From assembly GCA_001179505.1 (NCBI GenBank), contig CDMY01001019.1, positions 1 to 64,000 of the forward strand: a stretch of 64,000 nt of DNA, read 5' to 3'. The notes under the pieces are model-generated. The model ran no database searches and was not told the DNA's origin. It worked only from the letters and a program-made list of their open reading frames with translations. Source of the DNA: Vitrella brassicaformis CCMP3155 (lineage: Eukaryota; Protista; Chromerida). This document shows positions 4,846 through 43,144 of the stretch, in pieces; position 1 is the first letter of the stretch; each line of letters begins with the position of its first letter. Both the position numbers and the translations under genes were made by a program.

Positions 4846-11786
<6,941 letters not shown>

Positions 11787-35138: not shown

Positions 35139-38100
35139 TCACTTGCCCGCCTCTTCTGGTGCTTCGTCCCCCTGCTGTCCCTCTCCTTGGCAGCAGCGCT
35201 CTCCTGGTGGCGAATCATCAAAGTCGCCAGTATGCTGTCCCTTGTCGTCCTGCGTCTCGAACCGGACGCTCTTGCGGGTCATCGGCAGGGCGCTCGACTT
35301 GGTCCTCCCTCTCCCTTGCAGCGCATCAGAGGCCGTTGTGGTGCGGCGAACCCACAGGAGCGCCCCGGCCGTCACGAGCAGAATCAACAGCATGACGGCA
35401 CCGAAGCCAATCAGCACGTAGATGTGCAGCGGGAGGGAAGTGGCCCAAGGGTCCTCAAGTGGCCTCCCATCCACACCACCACGCGCAGGACCACCACCAC
35501 CAAGGCCGCTCTTGGTGGCTGCCTCTTCTTGGTCCTCCGCCTCCCAATAAGAGAATGACGGTGCACACGTGCGGTGGTGGTCGCAGTCAGACGAGACGGG
35601 CAGGGGGGGCGGGGAGGGCATCAACATGAATGAGAGGGAGGGGTCGACAGAGAAGGCGGTGGTCGAGCGGATGGGTGAGGACGCGTTGGCGAGGATGCTC
35701 TCCCACACAGGCAGTGAGTCCGAGTACTTGACGTTCAGCAACCTACACACACAGAGAGGATGAGGTCGGTCTGTTGTTCTGTGTGTGCATGTGGTGTTAG
35801 TTACCGGAAGAGCGCAATGACGGATCCCCTCATGACGCCGATCATCTGCACGTTGGCGGCCCTCCTGCTGACCGCTCGGCCGGATGCCCGCGCTGCGTCG
35901 AGCGCTTCATCAAACGACTCAGTGAGGGTGTGTTGCAGATCCGTCAGGAAGCCGTCAAGCTGAGTGGCATCCTGACAACAACACAGACACACACATAGAT
36001 ACGGGTGACCCCTGTGTGTGTCCATGTGTGTGTCTGTGGGTGTCTGGTGCTCACGGCCGTGATCTGGTCGTAGTCCTTTCCCAGCACTCTGACCACCAGG
36101 TAGGTGTCGTCATGCTCATGCTCGTCGGGTGTTGCTGCGCCAGCCTGGCTGCCGGCCAGCAGCACAGAGGCGTTGTTCTGCTCGCACACGAAGCGCCGCT
36201 TGGACACACAGGAAAGGGCCTTCAACCGCTCACCGCCAGCAGACCTCTGCAAACATACACACACAACACACAGACACAGGGAGAGCACCCAGGCCACAAT
36301 AAGCACACGGGAAATGGGTGAAGTCGAAATCCCGTACCTCAATGATCCCGCAGCTGCCTTGGTTGAGGCCCTTCTCATCCACATGTGGGTCGCCGTCGTG
36401 CTGCCCGTGTGTATGGCCCCCGACCCACCCCCACCCCTCCCTCTGATGTTTGCGGAGACTCACCCAGTACTCGCCGTCCTGCTCACCGCGCTCGGGCACG
36501 TGATAAGGGGCACCAGAGAAGAGCGCATCGAACGGCGAGAGGCCGTCCTGCGTGTCGAAGGCGGCCAGCTGCCCGCCCTCCCTCTCGCATTGGCTGCTCG
36601 CCTCTTCCCACGACAGGCGGCCGAACTGTAGCTTGTAGCAGGAGCCGCCGATATCCGTGTAGCCCTCTGTGCACTGCTGCTGCTGGGTGCTGCTGTGATG
36701 GGCCGCCAGCACCCGAGAGGACCTGAGCGGACAGCCATCTGGACCGGCATAGGTGCTCTACACAGAGACAGAGAAGAGACGCAGGTCGATCCGTGTGCAT
36801 GTGGTGGTGCTTTGGTATATAGGTTACCTGTATGCTGCGGACATAGGCTGGGTGCAGAGGCACCAGGGGCGGCCGTGGGCCGCCGAACAAAGAGCACGAG
36901 GGCGGCTCGAGCTCGTGGGCGACACACGACGGCTCCTCGTCACACGCCGCCTCACATAGCTCATCGGTCGGCGCCCCTCCCACCTCGGCCAAGAGGCTCC
37001 TTTGGTCGCCGTGAGATGCCATAAGCCGACAGAGGGCCGACCGCCACACAAAAGCCGCACACTTGCCGTCCTTGCCACAGGCATCGCTGCACCCTCTGCG
37101 GGACGACCATGGGCCCTCTTCGCTGCTGCTGGTGTTGCTGCTGTTGCTGGTGGAGAGGACGAGAAAGGGGCGGTGGGAGGTGTCGTCGATCGTGAAGCCC
37201 TCATTGGCGCACGTGTTGTCTGCAGACACACGGAGAGATAATGTAGCCGTCTTTGTGTGGTGACAGTACCTTTGTCTGTGTCAGCCTACCGCAGCTGCGT
37301 GGCGCCCACACGGCCGACAGGTCCTCGCGGAAGCCGCCAGCACCGCCCCACCCCTTCATCAGGCACTCGGTGGCCATGCCCTCCTCGTTAACCACCCGAT
37401 AGACCACCGAGAAACACTCAGGGCTCTGCTGGCACCGATTTTGACAAGCCGCCAGGCTCACGCCGACGAGCGCACTGCCAATGGTGGGTGCCGCGATGTC
37501 CACCGCAATGCGCCTGCACGCCACATCGGATGACAGGACGGCCGCTGGGGAGAGCTCCGGCTGCTCTGGCAACGAGTATGTCGTCGTCTGCTGCTGCTGC
37601 TGCCGCTGCTGGCAGATGAATGGGTGCTTTGTGGCGACGAGACGGCCAATGTGGTGGCCTGGGGTCACACAGGGGGGAAGAGCGGCTGTGGTCGACGCAT
37701 GGTGGCTGTCGGAGGACGGGGTCTCTTCACAGTGGCCATGGCAAGGGTGGAGGCCCCAGTGCTGTGTGGGTGGGGCGGGGCGGCCCGTTGACACTTCTTG
37801 CGGCTGCAATGCAATGCATCGGAGAAAGGAATACGAAACATACCAAAACATCCGAGAGGATTCAACTCAAGAGAGAGTGCGCTTGCCTTGATGTATGCGC
37901 AGAGAGGTCCGTCATTGTCGCCTCCGCCACGCGCTCGGGCCAGCTCGCGCATCATGGCCACCATGTCGCCTGTGAGCGTCGTGTTGTCGATCCAGCGCCA
38001 CGTCCTTGGCTCTGCAGACAGCTGCACAAACCACAGGAGCGCAATGGGCATGTCTGTATCTGTGGGTTGCTGACGTACGTCGATATGCAGGCCTATGTGG

Positions 38101-40981
38101 TAGATGGCGTCATGAGTGCCCTGGGGTGCGGGGATGTGGCAGCTGGCCGCTGAAGAACCGGAACAGAAAAACCCCAACAGAGATGACAAATCGGCCTGTA
38201 GGCACACACACACACACGATACACCCACTCCCCCGTCTCTCCCTCCCTCTCTCTACACCCACCTCGTCTCTGACGGTGGCCAGGTGCCCCCCACTCTGCT
38301 CACACACCGCCTGTGCGCCCTCCCACCCCTGCTGCTCCCACACAACACGATAGCACTCGCCGTTTCTCAACCCAAAGTAGCCATCCCGACATTGACCGCC
38401 ATCGGCATCGTCACTCTGCCCCTTGAACGCGCTCGCCGCGCTACGTGAGGGGCACGCGGCCGGCCCCGAGACGTATTTGCGGTTGAATGTTGGGTGGATG
38501 AGCTGCCTGGTGGGAGGGAGGGGCAAGGGGGGCTGCGCGTCGGTGAGGATGAGTGTGCAGGTGGGCGGCTGGTAGTGGGTGCTGGCTGCAGGTGGGCACG
38601 ACCTCGAATCGGGTGCGGGGAAAGAATGCAGCACCGTGTCGCTCTCCTGCACACAGACAAAGCACATAAGCGCAGGGTGAGACAGAGAGAGAGGGAGAGG
38701 GAGAGAGAGAGAGAGAGGGCGAGGGAGAGAGTCTCACCGCGTCTCTGGTTTGGCATTCTGGTGGGCTCCATGTGTAGCCGGTGCAGCCCTTGTTCTGCTG
38801 GCACACGAGGTGGCACGACGCCGCCCCGCCCGTCGCGTTGACCGTCGCCGTGTGGTAGTGCCGCGCGCCACGCGGCGGATGGTAGATGAACCCCTCCTCC
38901 ACACAGCTCATATCTGTACACCCACCAGACAACAGACAGCAAACACACCCATCCATCCATTCATCCACCCTCTCCCCTCTGTTCTTGCTCAAGTCGGCTC
39001 ACCGCAGCTCCTCGGCGCGGCGACCATGTGCTCGCCCCCCTGCTCAGCCACCTGAGCGTCCCACCCATACATGACGCAGGTGCCCTCCCGCCAGCCGTGC
39101 ACCACGTGGAAGCAGCCGGGCCGCCTCGCACACAGCGACTGGCACTCCTGCAGGCTGCCGACAGGTGCCGATGGGCGTGGGTGGGTGAGGACGGTGCCGT
39201 GCAGAGTGCGGCCGTTGAGACAGCAGCCGGGGGCGGGGCACACTGAAGGGGAAGATGGCGTAGGATGATTGGCCAGAGAGAGAAATATGCCTCCTTCTCT
39301 CTCTGTGTGTTGGTGTACCTGTTGGGCTGACGAGTGGTGGGGGAGGTGGGAGAGATAGCAGCTTTGTAGATGTCTCGTTCCGCCGCTTCTCGCAGATGTA
39401 CCGACGCACAACGCGGGTCGCCTTGCCTGACACACACACACACACACCATCCACAATGTGCACCCACGACTCACACATCTCATCCCGTTCTCGTTCTCGT
39501 TGATCTGGCCTTACCGGCCTTCCCATTTGCGGTGCAGTAGGGCAGATTCTGCCACTTGGGTGCGTCGATGACCTCGTGGACACACTGGTAGTGGCAGGGG
39601 GCCGTCAGCCACCCACCACTGGGCGAGCCGTCTTCGATGCTCATCGGCTGCAGACAACACCCACCACATGCAGGTGTGAATGCATGTGTGTTGGTGTGAG
39701 TGTGGGAGGGGTGGGTGACCACCTGGATAAGGGCGCATGACTCGCCCGGCTCATCTGCTGCTGTGGGCGGCGTCATCGTGACATTGGATTGGTCCATCCA
39801 CTGCCAGTGGTCTTGCTCGTCCTGACACACGAACACACGACGTCGTGTGTGTGTCCGACCACTGCCAAATGGCTCACTCGGTATAGCCCGATCCAGTATG
39901 CATTGTCGTGGAGCCCGCCGGCAGGGACGCGACACGAGCCGTCGGGACAGAACAAAGACATCACCGATGCCTGACGCGCCTGCACCACACACACACACAT
40001 GCATTCCGACATGCAGCCATTGCCATGTGTCGACATACCTCGGTGTCGACGACAGCGAGATGCCCGCCCTCCTGTCGACAGATGCTCTCGGCCTCCCTCC
40101 ACGTGGCCATCTCATAGCTGACCCGATAGCACGACGACCCTCCCACACCCACACCCACCGACACATAACCCTCACCACACACACCCTGACCACCATCAGC
40201 ACCAGGCCGCCCCTCGTCAGCCGACCGCCGGTCGGGGCACGGAGCTGGGCCTGACACGTGCTGCATCATGTGGTCGTTGAAGTAGCCGTCGACGAGGGAA
40301 ATGGGGTGTTTTCTCGACTTGAGGTGGCATGTGGGTGGCTGGTACGTGGCCTCGTCGCAGTCGGGATTGTCGTCACAGAGGTCGGTGCAGGACTGTTTGG
40401 AGGGAGAGGGAGGGGAAGAGGGGGGCGCGGTGATGTGGAGAGGCGATTGAAGGCCCTGTGGTCGACACACACATGTGTGTGGCTATGTATGAAGTCTCTC
40501 CCAGCCCAGCCACCCACCTTTTTGATGAGTTGGCACTGTGGGCCGGTCCATGTGAAGTACCGGCACCCCTCCGCCCGCTTGCACGCCCTGTCGCATCCCT
40601 CAGGCCCGTCACTGCCGTCGGACTCACCCACAGCGGCCGACGGATCGTTGGCGGCGTAGATGAAGCCGCGGTCATAACATGACTCATCTGCAAACACACG
40701 CAACCAACACAAACACACAGAACGCATCAAGATCCTTTGAATCATTGTGTCCATCACTCACCGCAGCTTCTGGGGCCGACGAGGAGGTCGGCATCTTTAT
40801 TCTCCCGAATGGTGCCGTTCCATCCCACCATGTAGCAGCTGCCCCACTCGCCATAGCCCGTATAGTGACACTGGGGCGTCCGTGCGCACGCGGCCTGGCA
40901 CTCTGACGCTTCCTTGACCGGCTCGACCAGACCCACACCGATGCCTGAGAGCTCGCCACGTCGATAACACGAAACCTCTGA

Positions 40982-41016
<35 letters not shown>

Positions 41017-42627
41017 TGAGAGGGGATGCAGAGGACACCTTTCAGGTCTCTCTGTGTCCCCGGGTCTGTACCCTCTGGCAGCTCTCTTGCGAGAGGGTAT
41101 CCACACGCCCGCTTGACAGCGCTGCGGGCAGACGTGTCGGTGCCCCTGACCGGCTTGTTGAACAAAAACCGCTTCAGCTCGCAGTTGAAAGTGACCGGCT
41201 CGCCCGTCTCATCGATGTCGTCAGTGACGCCCTCTGGGTGGTAGACGTAGGCCCCGCACGCCATGGCCTGGCTGCACATGAATTGGCACTGACGCTGGGA
41301 GAGGACGGTGTGGTGGGCCAGGCGGTGGAAAGGATTGGGCTCGTACCCCGTGGGCAGCTCGTCGAAGCACCACTCCACTGTCACGAGAGGGCGAGAGAGG
41401 GAGAGAAGGAGATGATACGCGCCTCTCTCTCTCCCTCTCTGTTTTCTGCGGGCTTAGCTTACCGCAGTGCTGTGGGCCGGAAACGATCGACGGGCCGCCC
41501 ATTTGGCGCGGCTCGCCCCCCTCCCGATGCAGCACACACTCGCCCCGTCTGCCGTCGTAGGTGAAGGCCGCGCACTCCCACCTCGTCTGGCACTCGCGCT
41601 GACACATGGCGGCCGACGCGATGCCCGTCATCGGCTGCGACACGAGATGGGGGCCTGAGTTCTCCGTGGATGGCTGGTGGCACGACGTCGGCACTGAACA
41701 AGGGGAGAGGGAGGGAGAGAGCGGATGCAGGAGAAGGTACCTTTTCGTTGTGTGTGTTGTGAGGTGTGCTTACGGGGAGGGCTCTTTTCGATGTTTTTTG
41801 TGAGGTTGATGCGGTCGAGGGTCATGTGCAGGGTGCCGTTGACGGCTCGCACGTTCTCTGGCCGGAAGAGCGCCCGGTTGACGTCAAAGGTGAAGTCCCC
41901 CCGCACCCAGTGGCCGCCATCATGCGCATCAACCACGCCCTCGAAATCGTCTCTCCAAAGCGACTGACACACACACCACAGACACACACACACACACACA
42001 CACACACGTGTCTGCGCTCGCCCCCATCTGTGTCACGAGCGTACCACAAACGCGTGTTTCTCCTGGTCGAGTCTCCACACCTCCACATAGTCGACCAGCC
42101 CCGTGACGGCCGCCCCGCCCCCGCAGTACATGCGGTTGTCGAAGGTGCCGCCCCAGAAGCGGCTGATGTGCTTGTTCATCGGCCACAGGTTCAGGTGCAG
42201 CGACAAAGGCTCCCTGAAGTGGGCCAGCAGCGCCGGGTCGGTCTCCCTGCGGACTGTCCGGTGGTCGAACAAGAAGGCCACGAAATCTGCCACACGCTCA
42301 CACGGAGAGAGAGAGAGGGGGGGGAGTGGGAGAACCGTGTGCTCGTGTGTGTTGGTGTGGGTGTGAGCGGTGCCATCCACGCACCAGGTGTCCACTCGAT
42401 GGCGATTGTGTGGAACTCCTCGCCCCATTTCTCGACGCCCCAGTCGCTGGCGTCGTGAATGCGCTGCCTGAGCGACCTCTGGGTGCTGTTGGGGTCGCTC
42501 CAGATCATGTTGGTCTGGAAGAGGCGGGCAGCCGAGCTGCTGAAGGAGAGCGTCTGCGACGAGCCGAATATCTCGATGTCCAGCTCAGACCTGACAACAC
42601 AGTCCACACAGGTCACAGATGTGTGGA

Positions 42628-42677
<50 letters not shown>

Positions 42678-43144
42678 GCGCACCATGCGGCCATCGGGTG
42701 GGTGGAGTTGGGTCTGTAGAGGAAGAAGGACATGACGGCCCCCTCGCACACAACCGGACGCACACGCACCTCGAAACGACCTGCACATATCGATAGCGAT
42801 ACACACACACAAGCTGGGCATGCTCTCTGCGTCTATGCGCGTGGTGTCCGTACCGTAATGGAACAGCTCATCGCCATCGGCAGTCACTGGGGACACCGAA
42901 GCTGCACAGACACACACACACACACACACACATAGTGATGATGATCTGAATGCCCTTCCTGCAGCCCCCCCGTGTTTATGTGTGTGTGTGTGTGTGTACC
43001 TCCGCTGAAGAGCTTCTCGCATGTGCCCGTGTTGACGTTGAAAAACATCTCCTCAGTGCCGTCGTGGATGGGGCACTGGCCCCTTACAGACGCCACAACA
43101 ACAGCAGCAGCCGCAACAAACACAAAAGATGCTCGAGGGGACAT
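35139..43144 (-). CDS. Large type I membrane protein: signal peptide - circularly permuted GH16 beta-glucanase - about 10 PAN/Apple modules interspersed with 3 C-type lectin domains - SEA-like domain - TM - cytoplasmic tail
   Basis: Leader MSPRASFVFVAAAAVVVASVRG. GH16 motifs YGRFEVRVR, WSELDIEIFG (ExDxE), EFHTIAIEWTP, HLNLW, VDYVEVW. Repeated CxxxC...C...(F/Y)x(Y/W)...C.L...SGPxxC PAN modules. CTL motifs SCYRV...TWREAESICRQEGGHLAV, ECYRV...WEGAQAVCEQSGGHLAT and SCYKL...SWEEASSQCEREGGQLA. TM HIYVLIGFGAVMLLILLVTAGALLWV followed by RR. Confidence 0.88.

What the first reader, a model, noticed from the sequence alone, without database searches (positions are those of the whole stretch)
41770..43144. 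Circularly permuted, Fibrobacter-like GH16 beta-glucanase at the tip of a eukaryotic surface protein
Seen in sequence: after the catalytic core (YGRFEVRVR, WSELDIEIFG, EFHTIAIEWTP, HLNLW, VDYVEVW) comes the exon SLWRDDFEG...GHWVRGDFTFDVNRALFRPENVRAVNGTLHMTLDR (about 41770-41965). Established knowledge: in ordinary GH16 lichenases this WxDxF...W...N...L.L.L segment forms the N-terminus. It follows the core in the naturally circularly permuted Fibrobacter succinogenes 1,3-1,4-beta-glucanase, whose motifs (recalled from memory) line up in order with this protein. The ExDxE nucleophile/acid-base motif (42572-42586) is intact. Inference: a bacterial-type permuted glucanase, perhaps horizontally acquired and now carrying several introns, serves as an active ecto-enzyme.
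Basis: partly seen in the sequence, partly recalled or inferred. Interest (0 to 1): 0.9.

Follow-up and report, generated by a model that had tools for sequence, protein, structure and literature searches.

The report
Permuted bacterial-type glucanase on algal surface protein
The alga Vitrella brassicaformis, a close photosynthetic relative of malaria-type parasites, has a spliced, transcribed gene whose giant membrane-anchored lectin protein starts with a beta-glucanase domain. This domain shows the rare "circularly permuted" chain order known from the rumen bacterium Fibrobacter and is most likely an old bacterial gene put to new use.

Summary
The observation and its main interpretation hold.

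- **Gene:** a minus-strand gene at 43144-35142 encodes a 2016-aa type-I membrane protein (CEM38970.1 / A0A0G4H5A7, Vitrella brassicaformis). Its order is signal peptide, GH16 domain, 8-9 PAN/Apple domains, 3 C-type lectin domains, TM helix.
- **Splicing:** the GH16 part lies in six exons with GT-AG introns. An assembled transcript joins exon 6 (41963-41774) directly between exon 5 and the first PAN exon.
- **Permutation:** residues 60-297 align in one colinear stretch with all Fibrobacter succinogenes 1,3-1,4-beta-glucanase structures (E 4e-21). An AlphaFold model matches them at Z 29. It also matches engineered permuted Bacillus glucanases over their full length (Z 25).
- **Contrast with ordinary GH16:** wild-type lichenases align only with the core (Z 15.7). 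They leave the exon-6 segment and their own N-terminal 53 residues unmatched.
- **Active site:** E99-x-D101-x-E103 and the aromatic cleft residues are intact. Four polar sugar-contact positions differ, so activity is likely but the substrate is uncertain.
- **Origin:** all other permuted relatives found are bacterial, from several phyla, at about 30% identity to the Fibrobacterota sequences compared. Old horizontal acquisition is the best reading, but the donor is unresolved.
- **Earlier notes:** the scan had already noted at least 8 other permuted GH16 loci in this genome. This is one intact member of a family.

The parts
35142..43144 (-). Whole gene: 2016-aa type-I membrane protein (P0001 = CEM38970.1 / A0A0G4H5A7). 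Signal peptide, GH16, 8-9 PAN, 3 C-type lectin domains, TM at about residues 1921-1947, about 70-aa cytoplasmic tail.
   Evidence: tblastn of P0001 on the window and hydropathy; Pfam; record and gene call; name and organism
43000..43144 (-). Exon 1: start codon at 43144, signal peptide (residues 1-22), a 21-aa Cys-containing extension, and the first GH16 strand (K-L-F-S-G-A).
   Evidence: S47/G48/A49 conserved with the Fibrobacter-type N-terminus
42854..42901 (-). Exon 2 (48 nt)
   Evidence: (joint 42778/42852, cut +2)
42684..42780 (-). Exon 3: strands with RFEVRVR and SFFLY (F84 and Y86 of the sugar cleft)
42385..42590 (-). Exon 4: catalytic strand and long loop, up to IEWTP
   Evidence: (GH16 E 0.022 for this exon alone)
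42572..42586 (-). Catalytic motif E99-L-D101-I-E103, matching E56/D58/E60 of the Fibrobacter enzyme
   Evidence: read from the sequence; aligned
42045..42286 (-). Exon 5: HLNLW and VDYVEVW strands. It ends in the linker that joins the ancestral C-terminus to the ancestral N-terminus.
41774..41963 (-). Exon 6: the relocated module (residues 247-309). It forms the N-terminal strands in ordinary GH16 and follows the core here.
   Evidence: alone it hits only Fibrobacter chains at residues 182-230, E 8e-5; unaligned to wild-type lichenases but aligned to engineered permutants; spliced between exons 5 and 7 in RNA
41463..41693 (-). Exon 7: first PAN/Apple domain
   Evidence: Pfam PF00024, E 1.1e-8

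Best explanation
This is an expressed, intact Vitrella brassicaformis gene. The N-terminal, membrane-distal domain of its product is a family-16 glycoside hydrolase with the same circular permutation as the Fibrobacter succinogenes 1,3-1,4-beta-glucanase. The chain starts at the strand that follows the N-terminal module in ordinary GH16 enzymes. It runs through the catalytic core, crosses a short linker, and ends with that N-terminal module, which is exon 6. The shown parts are the permuted order, the splicing, the intact E99/D101/E103 triad and the type-I membrane architecture with PAN and C-type lectin domains. Three points are inferred. First, the domain works as a retaining endo-beta-glucanase outside the cell, with E99 as nucleophile and E103 as acid/base. 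It would cut a beta-glucan of mixed-linkage or related type, while the PAN and lectin repeats hold the glycan or a neighbouring surface. Second, the domain descends from a bacterial permuted GH16 taken up long ago, which then gained introns and host-like base composition and was fused to adhesin-type repeats. Third, it is one of several paralogues in this alga.
For: Sequence: one colinear stretch from P0001 60-297 to chain 16-230 of 3AXD/1MVE and relatives, E 4e-21 to 6e-19. Non-permuted lichenases match the core only. The tail alone hits only Fibrobacter chains at their C-terminal part. The core alone also scores higher with Fibrobacter (52-54 bits) than with 3I4I (43), 3WVJ (41) or Bacillus (30). 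Structure: model pLDDT 78.9, pTM 0.80. Foldseek ranks 1-9 are all the Fibrobacter enzyme (TM by target 0.83-0.87), followed by the engineered permutants 1CPM/1CPN. VIA-align gives Z 28-29 over model 19-279 to chain 2-234, and Z 25 to 1CPM/1CPN/1AXK over their full length. It gives Z 15.7 to wild-type lichenases, model 19-216 to chain 54-214 only. Same break point: the alignment with 6 and with 36 permuted sequences starts at the conserved S-G-A strand and ends after the G-x-L-x-x-x-L strand, at 30-34% identity. Catalytic and aromatic residues are invariant. Eukaryotic gene: six GT-AG introns, and GC/GC3 of 0.61/0.81 against 0.65/0.77 for the rest of the gene. A spliced transcript contig exists. 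Architecture: Pfam and hydropathy. Distribution: all 85 metagenome loci and the 120 listed database hits are Fibrobacter-type sequences, and every source-given name among the listed hits is Fibrobacter or Hallerella. Colinear full-length structural matches occur in clusters of six bacterial phyla. In AlphaFold DB the best colinear match is another A0A0G4-series GH16 protein (954 aa, 24% identity), followed by two further proteins (431 and 402 aa) whose organism the tool does not give. UniRef names this protein's cluster 'n=5 Tax=Vitrella brassicaformis'.
Against: No enzyme assay exists. Positions that I recall as hydrogen-bonding to the sugar in the Fibrobacter enzyme differ: E11 to S50, N44 to P88, E47 to T91, R137 to H196. 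W203 is F270. Substrate preference, or hydrolysis versus transglycosylation, may therefore differ. The model was built with an alignment of Fibrobacter-type sequences, so its likeness to 1MVE is partly guided by that alignment; the single-sequence model was useless. My tree could not place the sequence (branch length 10, polytomy), and no donor lineage closer than about 30% identity was found. Exon 5 alone found no relative among 1.84 billion representatives, so any paralogues are very divergent, and I could not retrieve them.
Confidence: 0.8

Rival explanations
1. The fold and permutation are as described, but the domain is not a lichenase-type hydrolase. It could be a transglycosylase that remodels the alga's own wall, like plant XTH or fungal Crh. 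It could instead be mainly a glycan-binding module within a multi-lectin receptor.
For: Four polar cleft positions differ from the Fibrobacter enzyme (alignments). The domain sits on a membrane-anchored stalk of PAN and C-type lectin domains. Other GH16 genes acquired by eukaryotes from bacteria are proposed to have become wall-remodelling enzymes (PMC8711696). The NCBIfam BglS equivalog scores only 53 bits against a cut-off of 300.
Against: The nucleophile, the helper aspartate and the acid/base are all intact, and so is the aromatic platform (W97, W200, W210, F84, Y86, F272). Pure binding modules derived from GH16 usually lose these residues.
Confidence: 0.2
2. The permutation arose independently in the alga's lineage, for example by duplication and truncation or by exon shuffling. 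It only resembles the Fibrobacter arrangement.
For: The intron between exons 5 and 6 falls exactly in the linker, so exon 6 is the relocated module. The tree is uninformative.
Against: The new N- and C-termini sit at the same strands as in the bacterial enzymes. Both halves are more similar to the permuted bacterial enzymes than to any non-permuted one. The same order is widespread in intron-less bacterial genes.
Confidence: 0.05
3. The gene was inherited vertically from an ancient eukaryotic permuted GH16, or the transfer went from eukaryote to bacteria. In either case it was not acquired from bacteria.
For: Composition is fully host-like and there are many introns. Divergence from every bacterial sequence found is very deep.
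Against: No other eukaryotic permuted GH16 appeared apart from one further A0A0G4-series protein. Other eukaryotic GH16 hits are non-permuted. Permuted forms occur in at least six bacterial phyla.
Confidence: 0.1
4. The apparent gene is bacterial contamination or an assembly or annotation artefact.
For: None found.
Against: The gene lies inside a 227-kb nuclear contig. Spliceosomal introns interrupt the domain, and one transcript contig joins it to the PAN and lectin exons. Genomic runs X2-X6 hold 60-97% of the sampled words of the unspliced form.
Confidence: 0.01

Closest known systems
Fibrobacter succinogenes 1,3-1,4-beta-D-glucanase (PDB 1MVE, 1ZM1, 3AXD, 3H0O, 2R49, 3HR9), the 'natural circularly-permutated jellyroll protein'
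   Same: Same chain order and the same break point. The alignment is colinear over about 230 residues (about 30% identity, Z 29, rmsd 2.0). The ExDxE triad, W54/W141/W148/W186/W198, F40, Y42, F205, Q70, N72 and N139 are all conserved.
   Different: It is eukaryotic, with six introns in the domain. It carries a 21-aa Cys-containing N-terminal extension and longer loops after the catalytic strand. Positions E11, N44, E47, R137 and W203 are changed. It is fused to PAN and C-type lectin repeats and a membrane anchor, not to the bacterial C-terminal tail. It lies far outside the tight Fibrobacterota clade, whose members share more than 60% identity.
Engineered circular permutants of the Bacillus hybrid lichenase (PDB 1CPM, 1CPN; GluXyn-1, 1AXK)
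   Same: The model aligns over their whole length (Z 25), which shows that the chain order matches a permutation near residue 54-59 of the Bacillus enzyme.
   Different: These are laboratory constructs at about 22% identity.
Ordinary GH16_21 licheninases and ExoK-type enzymes (Bacillus 1GBG/1MAC/3O5S, 3I4I, 3WVJ; Enterococcus and Indioceanicola plasmid genes)
   Same: Same fold, the same ExDxE strand without a beta-bulge, and a similar core (Z 15-16; 28-48 bits).
   Different: They are not permuted. Their N-terminal roughly 53 residues correspond to the C-terminal exon-6 segment here.
Eukaryotic GH16 genes of bacterial origin (Neocallimastigomycota lichenases; charophyte EG16-2, leading to plant XTH; fungal CRH)
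   Same: They set a precedent for bacterial GH16 genes taken up by eukaryotes and turned into extracellular or wall enzymes (PMC6827312, PMC8711696).
   Different: Those are non-permuted and are not fused to PAN or C-type lectin stalks.
Apicomplexan PAN/Apple adhesins (for example the MIC4 type) and C-type lectin receptors
   Same: Repeated PAN/Apple modules on a secreted or membrane protein in the same wider lineage.
   Different: To my knowledge, no catalytic glycoside hydrolase head is known on those adhesins.

Membership tests
Glycoside hydrolase family 16 (clan GH-B jelly roll) | Significant match to the family profile | tested here: met
   Pfam PF00722 scores 54.2 bits (cut-off 22), E 1.6e-14, residues 59-203 to profile positions 37-160 of 175
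Glycoside hydrolase family 16 (clan GH-B jelly roll) | Catalytic ExDxE (or ExDxxE) strand | tested here: met
   E99-L-D101-I-E103 at window 42586-42572. It aligns with E56/D58/E60 of 1MVE and is invariant in A1-A3
Glycoside hydrolase family 16 (clan GH-B jelly roll) | Beta-jelly-roll fold | tested here: met
   Predicted model only: pLDDT 78.9, Z 29 to solved GH16 structures
Naturally circularly permuted (Fibrobacter-type) GH16 | Colinear alignment with the permuted enzyme across the core and the relocated module | tested here: met
   One stretch, 60-297 to chain 16-230, E 4e-21; 226 residues aligned, model 21-279 to chain 4-234
Naturally circularly permuted (Fibrobacter-type) GH16 | The module that is N-terminal in ordinary GH16 lies after the core | tested here: met
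   Wild-type lichenases align chain 54-214 to model 19-216 only, whereas engineered permutants align over their full length. BLASTP against a non-permuted GH16 gives crossed segments: 47-199 to 133-280, and 248-297 to 62-111. The second segment is weak, E 0.27.
Naturally circularly permuted (Fibrobacter-type) GH16 | Same positions of the new termini | tested here: met
   Both start at the K-x-[FY]-S-G-A strand and end after the G-x-L-x-x-x-L strand
Licheninase, EC 3.2.1.73 (GH16_21 function) | Strict cleavage of beta-1,4 bonds next to beta-1,3 in mixed-linkage glucan | not testable with these tools
   Needs an enzyme assay
Licheninase, EC 3.2.1.73 (GH16_21 function) | Conserved sugar-contact residues of the Fibrobacter enzyme | tested here: inconclusive
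   The aromatic residues are kept, with W203 replaced by F270, the residue of the 3H0O variant's sequence. E11 to S50, N44 to P88, E47 to T91, R137 to H196 and E85 to Q139 are changed. The roles of these residues are recalled from the literature, not checked here.
Licheninase, EC 3.2.1.73 (GH16_21 function) | Reaches the curated equivalog score of NCBIfam BglS or ExoK | tested here: not met
   BglS scores 53 bits against a cut-off of 300; ExoK scores 22 against 350. Those models describe non-permuted bacterial enzymes.
CAZy subfamily GH16_21 | Assignment by the CAZy/dbCAN subfamily model | not tested
   No subfamily models are available here; the roadmap paper does not mention permuted members
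Horizontally acquired bacterial gene | Nested within a bacterial clade in a supported tree | tested here: inconclusive
   In the tree of 24 rows the query sits on a branch of length 10 in an open polytomy. Support comes from distribution only.

The most novel reading that the evidence does not exclude
Vitrella turned an anciently acquired, circularly permuted bacterial glucanase into a family of membrane-anchored 'enzyme plus lectin' receptors. In these, a glycan-cutting head sits on the same PAN/Apple stalk that apicomplexan parasites later used for host-cell adhesion. The family would couple cutting and gripping of a beta-glucan, either the alga's own sporangial wall or a partner's surface. 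It would be a fourth independent case of a bacterial GH16 becoming a eukaryotic wall or surface enzyme, and the first with the permuted fold.
Probability: 0.3. Interest if true: 0.6.

Novelty: new variant of a known kind. Interest (0 to 1): 0.5.

Why it matters
The natural circular permutation of GH16 is a textbook case that is usually tied to one rumen bacterium. Here the same permuted order sits in an intron-rich nuclear gene of a chromerid alga, at the tip of a PAN/C-type-lectin membrane protein. The structural searches also show that this order is spread over several bacterial phyla.

This adds a likely further bacterium-to-eukaryote transfer of a GH16 enzyme, alongside those proposed for anaerobic fungi, plant XTHs and fungal CRHs. 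It also links a carbohydrate-cutting domain to the adhesin-type modules of the lineage that gave rise to apicomplexan parasites.

The finding is directly testable by expression and assay. It is not a new kind of enzyme, and the protein is already in public databases, named only as 'GH16 domain-containing protein'.

Tried and rejected
- **Single exons against Pfam and PDB.** They are too short; only exon 4 gave a weak GH16 hit.
- **Word-indexed homologue search with the domain alone.** No hits, because the query shares no 5-residue words with its 30%-identical relatives.
- **Profile search with a long first sequence, meant to pull out long paralogues.** Unrelated candidates swamped it and it returned one irrelevant hit.
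- **Exon 5 against 1.84 billion representatives.** It found only the protein itself.
- **Genome-collection scan.** It returned one non-permuted Verrucomicrobiia GH16.
- **Plasmid tblastn.** It returned only non-permuted Enterococcus and Indioceanicola genes. I used these as re-ordered outgroups.
- **Maximum-likelihood tree.** It was uninformative: the query sits on a branch of length 10 with odd composition.
- **Single-sequence AlphaFold model.** pLDDT was 32, so it is unusable and the fold evidence cannot be made independent of the alignment.
- **Literature searches for the Fibrobacter active-site residues.** They found no open paper, so the residue roles are stated from memory.
- **Contamination or artefact.** Rejected on the introns, the spliced transcript and the contig context.
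- **Exon shuffling as the origin of the permutation.** Rejected as the main reading, because intron-less bacterial genes have the same order.
Full report
**What is there.** The region lies in a minus-strand, multi-exon gene. I read the sequence and placed the exon borders by their GT..AG ends:

| Exon | Window coordinates |
|---|---|
| 1 | 43144-43000 |
| 2 | 42901-42854 |
| 3 | 42780-42684 |
| 4 | 42590-42385 |
| 5 | 42286-42045 |
| 6 | 41963-41774 |
| 7 | 41693-41463 |

The six introns are 73-98 nt long and rich in CA/GT repeats. The spliced translation is identical to residues 1-309 of a 2016-aa database protein, P0001, which I recovered by searching exon 5 against 1.84 billion representative proteins. 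The sources call P0001 CEM38970.1 / A0A0G4H5A7, 'GH16 domain-containing protein', from Vitrella brassicaformis CCMP3155. It is encoded on contig CDMY01001019.1 of assembly GCA_001179505.1. The whole gene maps to window 43144-35142.

**Transcript evidence.** Run X7 holds a 6215-nt contig at depth 46 in which the introns are missing. The joints 41377/41463, 41693/41774, 42286/42385 and 42778/42852 are listed, all with CT..AC ends on the plus strand, which is GT..AG on the gene's strand. Exon 7 occupies record positions 5107-5337 and exon 5 occupies 5528-5769. The 190 letters between them are exactly the length of exon 6. The 41963/42045 joint was not printed because the tool skips the CA repeat there; it follows from the contiguous record coordinates. 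Runs X2-X6 hold 60-97% of the sampled words of the unspliced genomic form.

**What the domain is.** Pfam places GH16 at residues 59-203, at 54 bits against a cut-off of 22. These residues match profile positions 37-160 only, so the profile's N-terminal part finds nothing before the core.

- **PDB sequences.** Residues 23-310 give as their six best hits all entries of the F. succinogenes 1,3-1,4-beta-glucanase. Each aligns in one colinear stretch from P0001 60-297 to chain 16-230, with E 4e-21 to 6e-19. Ordinary lichenases match only the core, either query residues 38-88 or 38-195.
- **Exon-6 region alone.** It hits only the Fibrobacter chains, at their residues 182-230, with E 8e-5.
- **Core alone.** It scores 52-54 bits with Fibrobacter, against 43 (3I4I), 41 (3WVJ) and 30 (Bacillus).

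**Fold.** A motif taken from the alignment (W-x-x-G-D-[WFY]-T-F-D-x-N-R) retrieved 85 metagenome loci. All of them encode permuted GH16 proteins that are colinear with the query. An alignment of 36 such sequences, at 29-34% identity to the query, gave an AlphaFold model with pLDDT 78.9 and pTM 0.80.

| Comparison | Foldseek | VIA-align |
|---|---|---|
| Fibrobacter enzyme | ranks 1-9, TM by target 0.83-0.87, 262-273 columns | Z 28-29, model 19-279 to chain 2-234, rmsd 2.0 |
| Engineered permutants 1CPM/1CPN/1AXK | 1CPM/1CPN ranks 10-11, TM by target about 0.82; 1AXK lower (0.34-0.36) | Z 25, over their full length |
| Wild-type lichenases | TM by target about 0.55 | Z 15.7, model 19-216 to chain 54-214 only |

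The wild-type alignments leave the model's last 60 residues and the enzymes' first 53 residues unmatched. That is the signature of a circular permutation, at the same break point as in Fibrobacter. There is one caveat: the model was guided by an alignment of Fibrobacter-type sequences, and the single-sequence model was unusable. The sequence evidence does not depend on the model.

**Active site.** In P0001 numbering, W97, E99, D101, E103, F84, Y86, Q122, N124, E162, W163, N198, W200, W210, W249, W265, F272, D273, N275 and R276 are kept in all aligned permuted sequences. Counting along the alignment, these correspond to Fibrobacter W54, E56, D58, E60, F40, Y42, Q70, N72, E104, W105, N139, W141, W148, W186, W198, F205, D206, N208 and R209.

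- **Changed positions:** E11 to S50, V18 to F62, N44 to P88, E47 to T91, E85 to Q139, R137 to H196 and W203 to F270.
- **Engineered variants at the same positions:** PDB titles and sequences show that position 203 was changed in 3H0O (which carries F there) and in 3AXD (V18Y/W203Y), and that F40I (3HR9) and E85I (2R49) were also studied.
- **Basis for the residue roles:** which residues contact the sugar is my recollection of the 1ZM1 work, not a result obtained here.

I conclude that catalysis is likely and that the exact substrate is open.

**Architecture.** After the GH16 head come 8-9 PAN domains and three C-type lectin domains. One strongly hydrophobic segment lies at about residues 1921-1947, followed by a tail of about 70 residues. 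With the N-terminal signal peptide, this makes a type-I membrane protein whose enzyme domain is farthest from the membrane. No second GH16 copy lies in the window.

**Origin.**

- **Host-like gene.** The GH16 exons have the host's composition: GC 0.61 and GC3 0.81, against 0.65 and 0.77 for the rest of the gene.
- **Sequence relatives.** The profile search found 559 relatives. The 120 listed form a tight clade (more than 60% identity among themselves) that is 26-31% identical to the query, and every source-given organism name among them is Fibrobacter or Hallerella.
- **Structural matches in bacteria.** Searches of the ESM Atlas gave colinear, full-length matches in clusters from Pseudomonadota, Fibrobacterota, Fidelibacterota, Bacteroidota, Calditrichota and Ignavibacteriota. 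Bacillota clusters matched the core only.
- **AlphaFold DB.** The best colinear match is another protein of the A0A0G4 accession series, 954 aa long, with its domain at 66-304 and 24% identity. From memory that series holds the two chromerid proteomes, and this window's own protein is A0A0G4H5A7. Two further proteins follow (431 and 402 aa); their accessions look like bacterial metagenome entries to me, but the tool gives no organism. All other eukaryotic hits are non-permuted.
- **Paralogues.** UniRef names the cluster of this protein 'n=5 Tax=Vitrella brassicaformis'. The scan's own notes list at least eight other loci of this genome read as permuted GH16. One follow-up called its locus a decaying copy of a multiplied, bacterially derived family. 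I could not fetch those sequences, so I count them as leads.
- **Tree.** My tree with re-ordered non-permuted outgroups could not place the query.

The distribution therefore favours an old transfer from an unidentified bacterium with a permuted GH16, not from Fibrobacter itself. This remains an inference.

**Function.** The most likely mechanism is a retaining endo-glucanase that acts outside the cell. E99 attacks the anomeric carbon and E103 protonates the leaving group, as in other GH16 enzymes. The PAN and lectin repeats would provide glycan or surface binding. Possible targets are the alga's own thick sporangial wall, or beta-glucans of neighbouring organisms; nothing here decides between them. 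The main functional rival is a transglycosylase or binding role. It is suggested by the changed polar cleft residues and by the fate proposed for other bacterial GH16 genes in eukaryotes (PMC8711696).

**Known or new.** The GH16 roadmap lists GH16_21 as bacterial, with a few members in early-diverging anaerobic fungi, and does not mention permuted members (PMC6827312). The XTH-origin paper confines eukaryotic GH16_21 to Neocallimastigomycota and derives plant and fungal relatives from ExoK-type enzymes (PMC8711696). The chromerid genome paper does not mention glucanases or lectins (PMC4501334). My searches found no paper that describes a permuted GH16 in a eukaryote. The enzyme kind is known. 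What is new is the host, the introns and the fusion to a PAN/C-type-lectin membrane stalk, and within this scan the family had already been seen at other loci.

Noticed in passing
window 41964-42044 (intron between exons 5 and 6): This phase-0 intron falls exactly in the linker that joins the ancestral C-terminus to the ancestral N-terminus, and the next intron sits at the domain's end. Exon 6 is therefore precisely the relocated module. Bacterial genes have the same order without introns, so this is probably intron gain in a loop, but intron positions in the paralogues should be compared.
   Followed up: partly
window 42410-42433 (minus); L001:1054-2037: The eight residues E-K-W-G-E-E-F-H just before the IEWTP strand are identical in a non-permuted GH16 of a Verrucomicrobiia metagenome genome, at the homologous position, although overall identity is only 25%. 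The Fibrobacter-type enzymes have a shorter, different loop here.
   Followed up: partly
window 43015-43078 (minus), residues 23-43: A 21-residue extension with two cysteines (C24, C42) lies between the signal peptide and the first GH16 strand. It is absent from the bacterial enzymes and is modelled with pLDDT under 50. Its F-F-N-V-N stretch faintly recalls the F-T-F-D-V-N of the relocated module, which may be chance.
   Followed up: no
window 39980-40430: Contigs of all four runs pile up here (summed depth 70-165 against about 20-45 elsewhere). They carry many loose ends at 39986, 40004, 40159 and 40399-40425 and show alternative inserted letters. This points to a repeated or variable element inside the C-type-lectin part of the gene.
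   Followed up: no
residues F62 and F270 (window exons 2-3 junction and exon 6): The alga's enzyme naturally carries aromatic residues at the two positions (18 and 203 of the Fibrobacter enzyme) that were changed by engineering in PDB entries 3AXD (V18Y/W203Y) and 3H0O (which carries F at 203).
   Followed up: no
whole gene, 35142-43144: UniRef names this protein's cluster 'n=5 Tax=Vitrella brassicaformis'. Several related long proteins therefore exist in the species, although exon 5 of the GH16 domain found no relative at E 0.001 or better among 1.84 billion representatives.
   Followed up: partly
metagenome loci L002-L086: A single 12-residue motif pattern retrieved 85 metagenome contigs. 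All of them carry Fibrobacter-type permuted GH16 genes of 290-880 aa, so the permuted form is abundant in the sampled metagenomes.
   Followed up: partly
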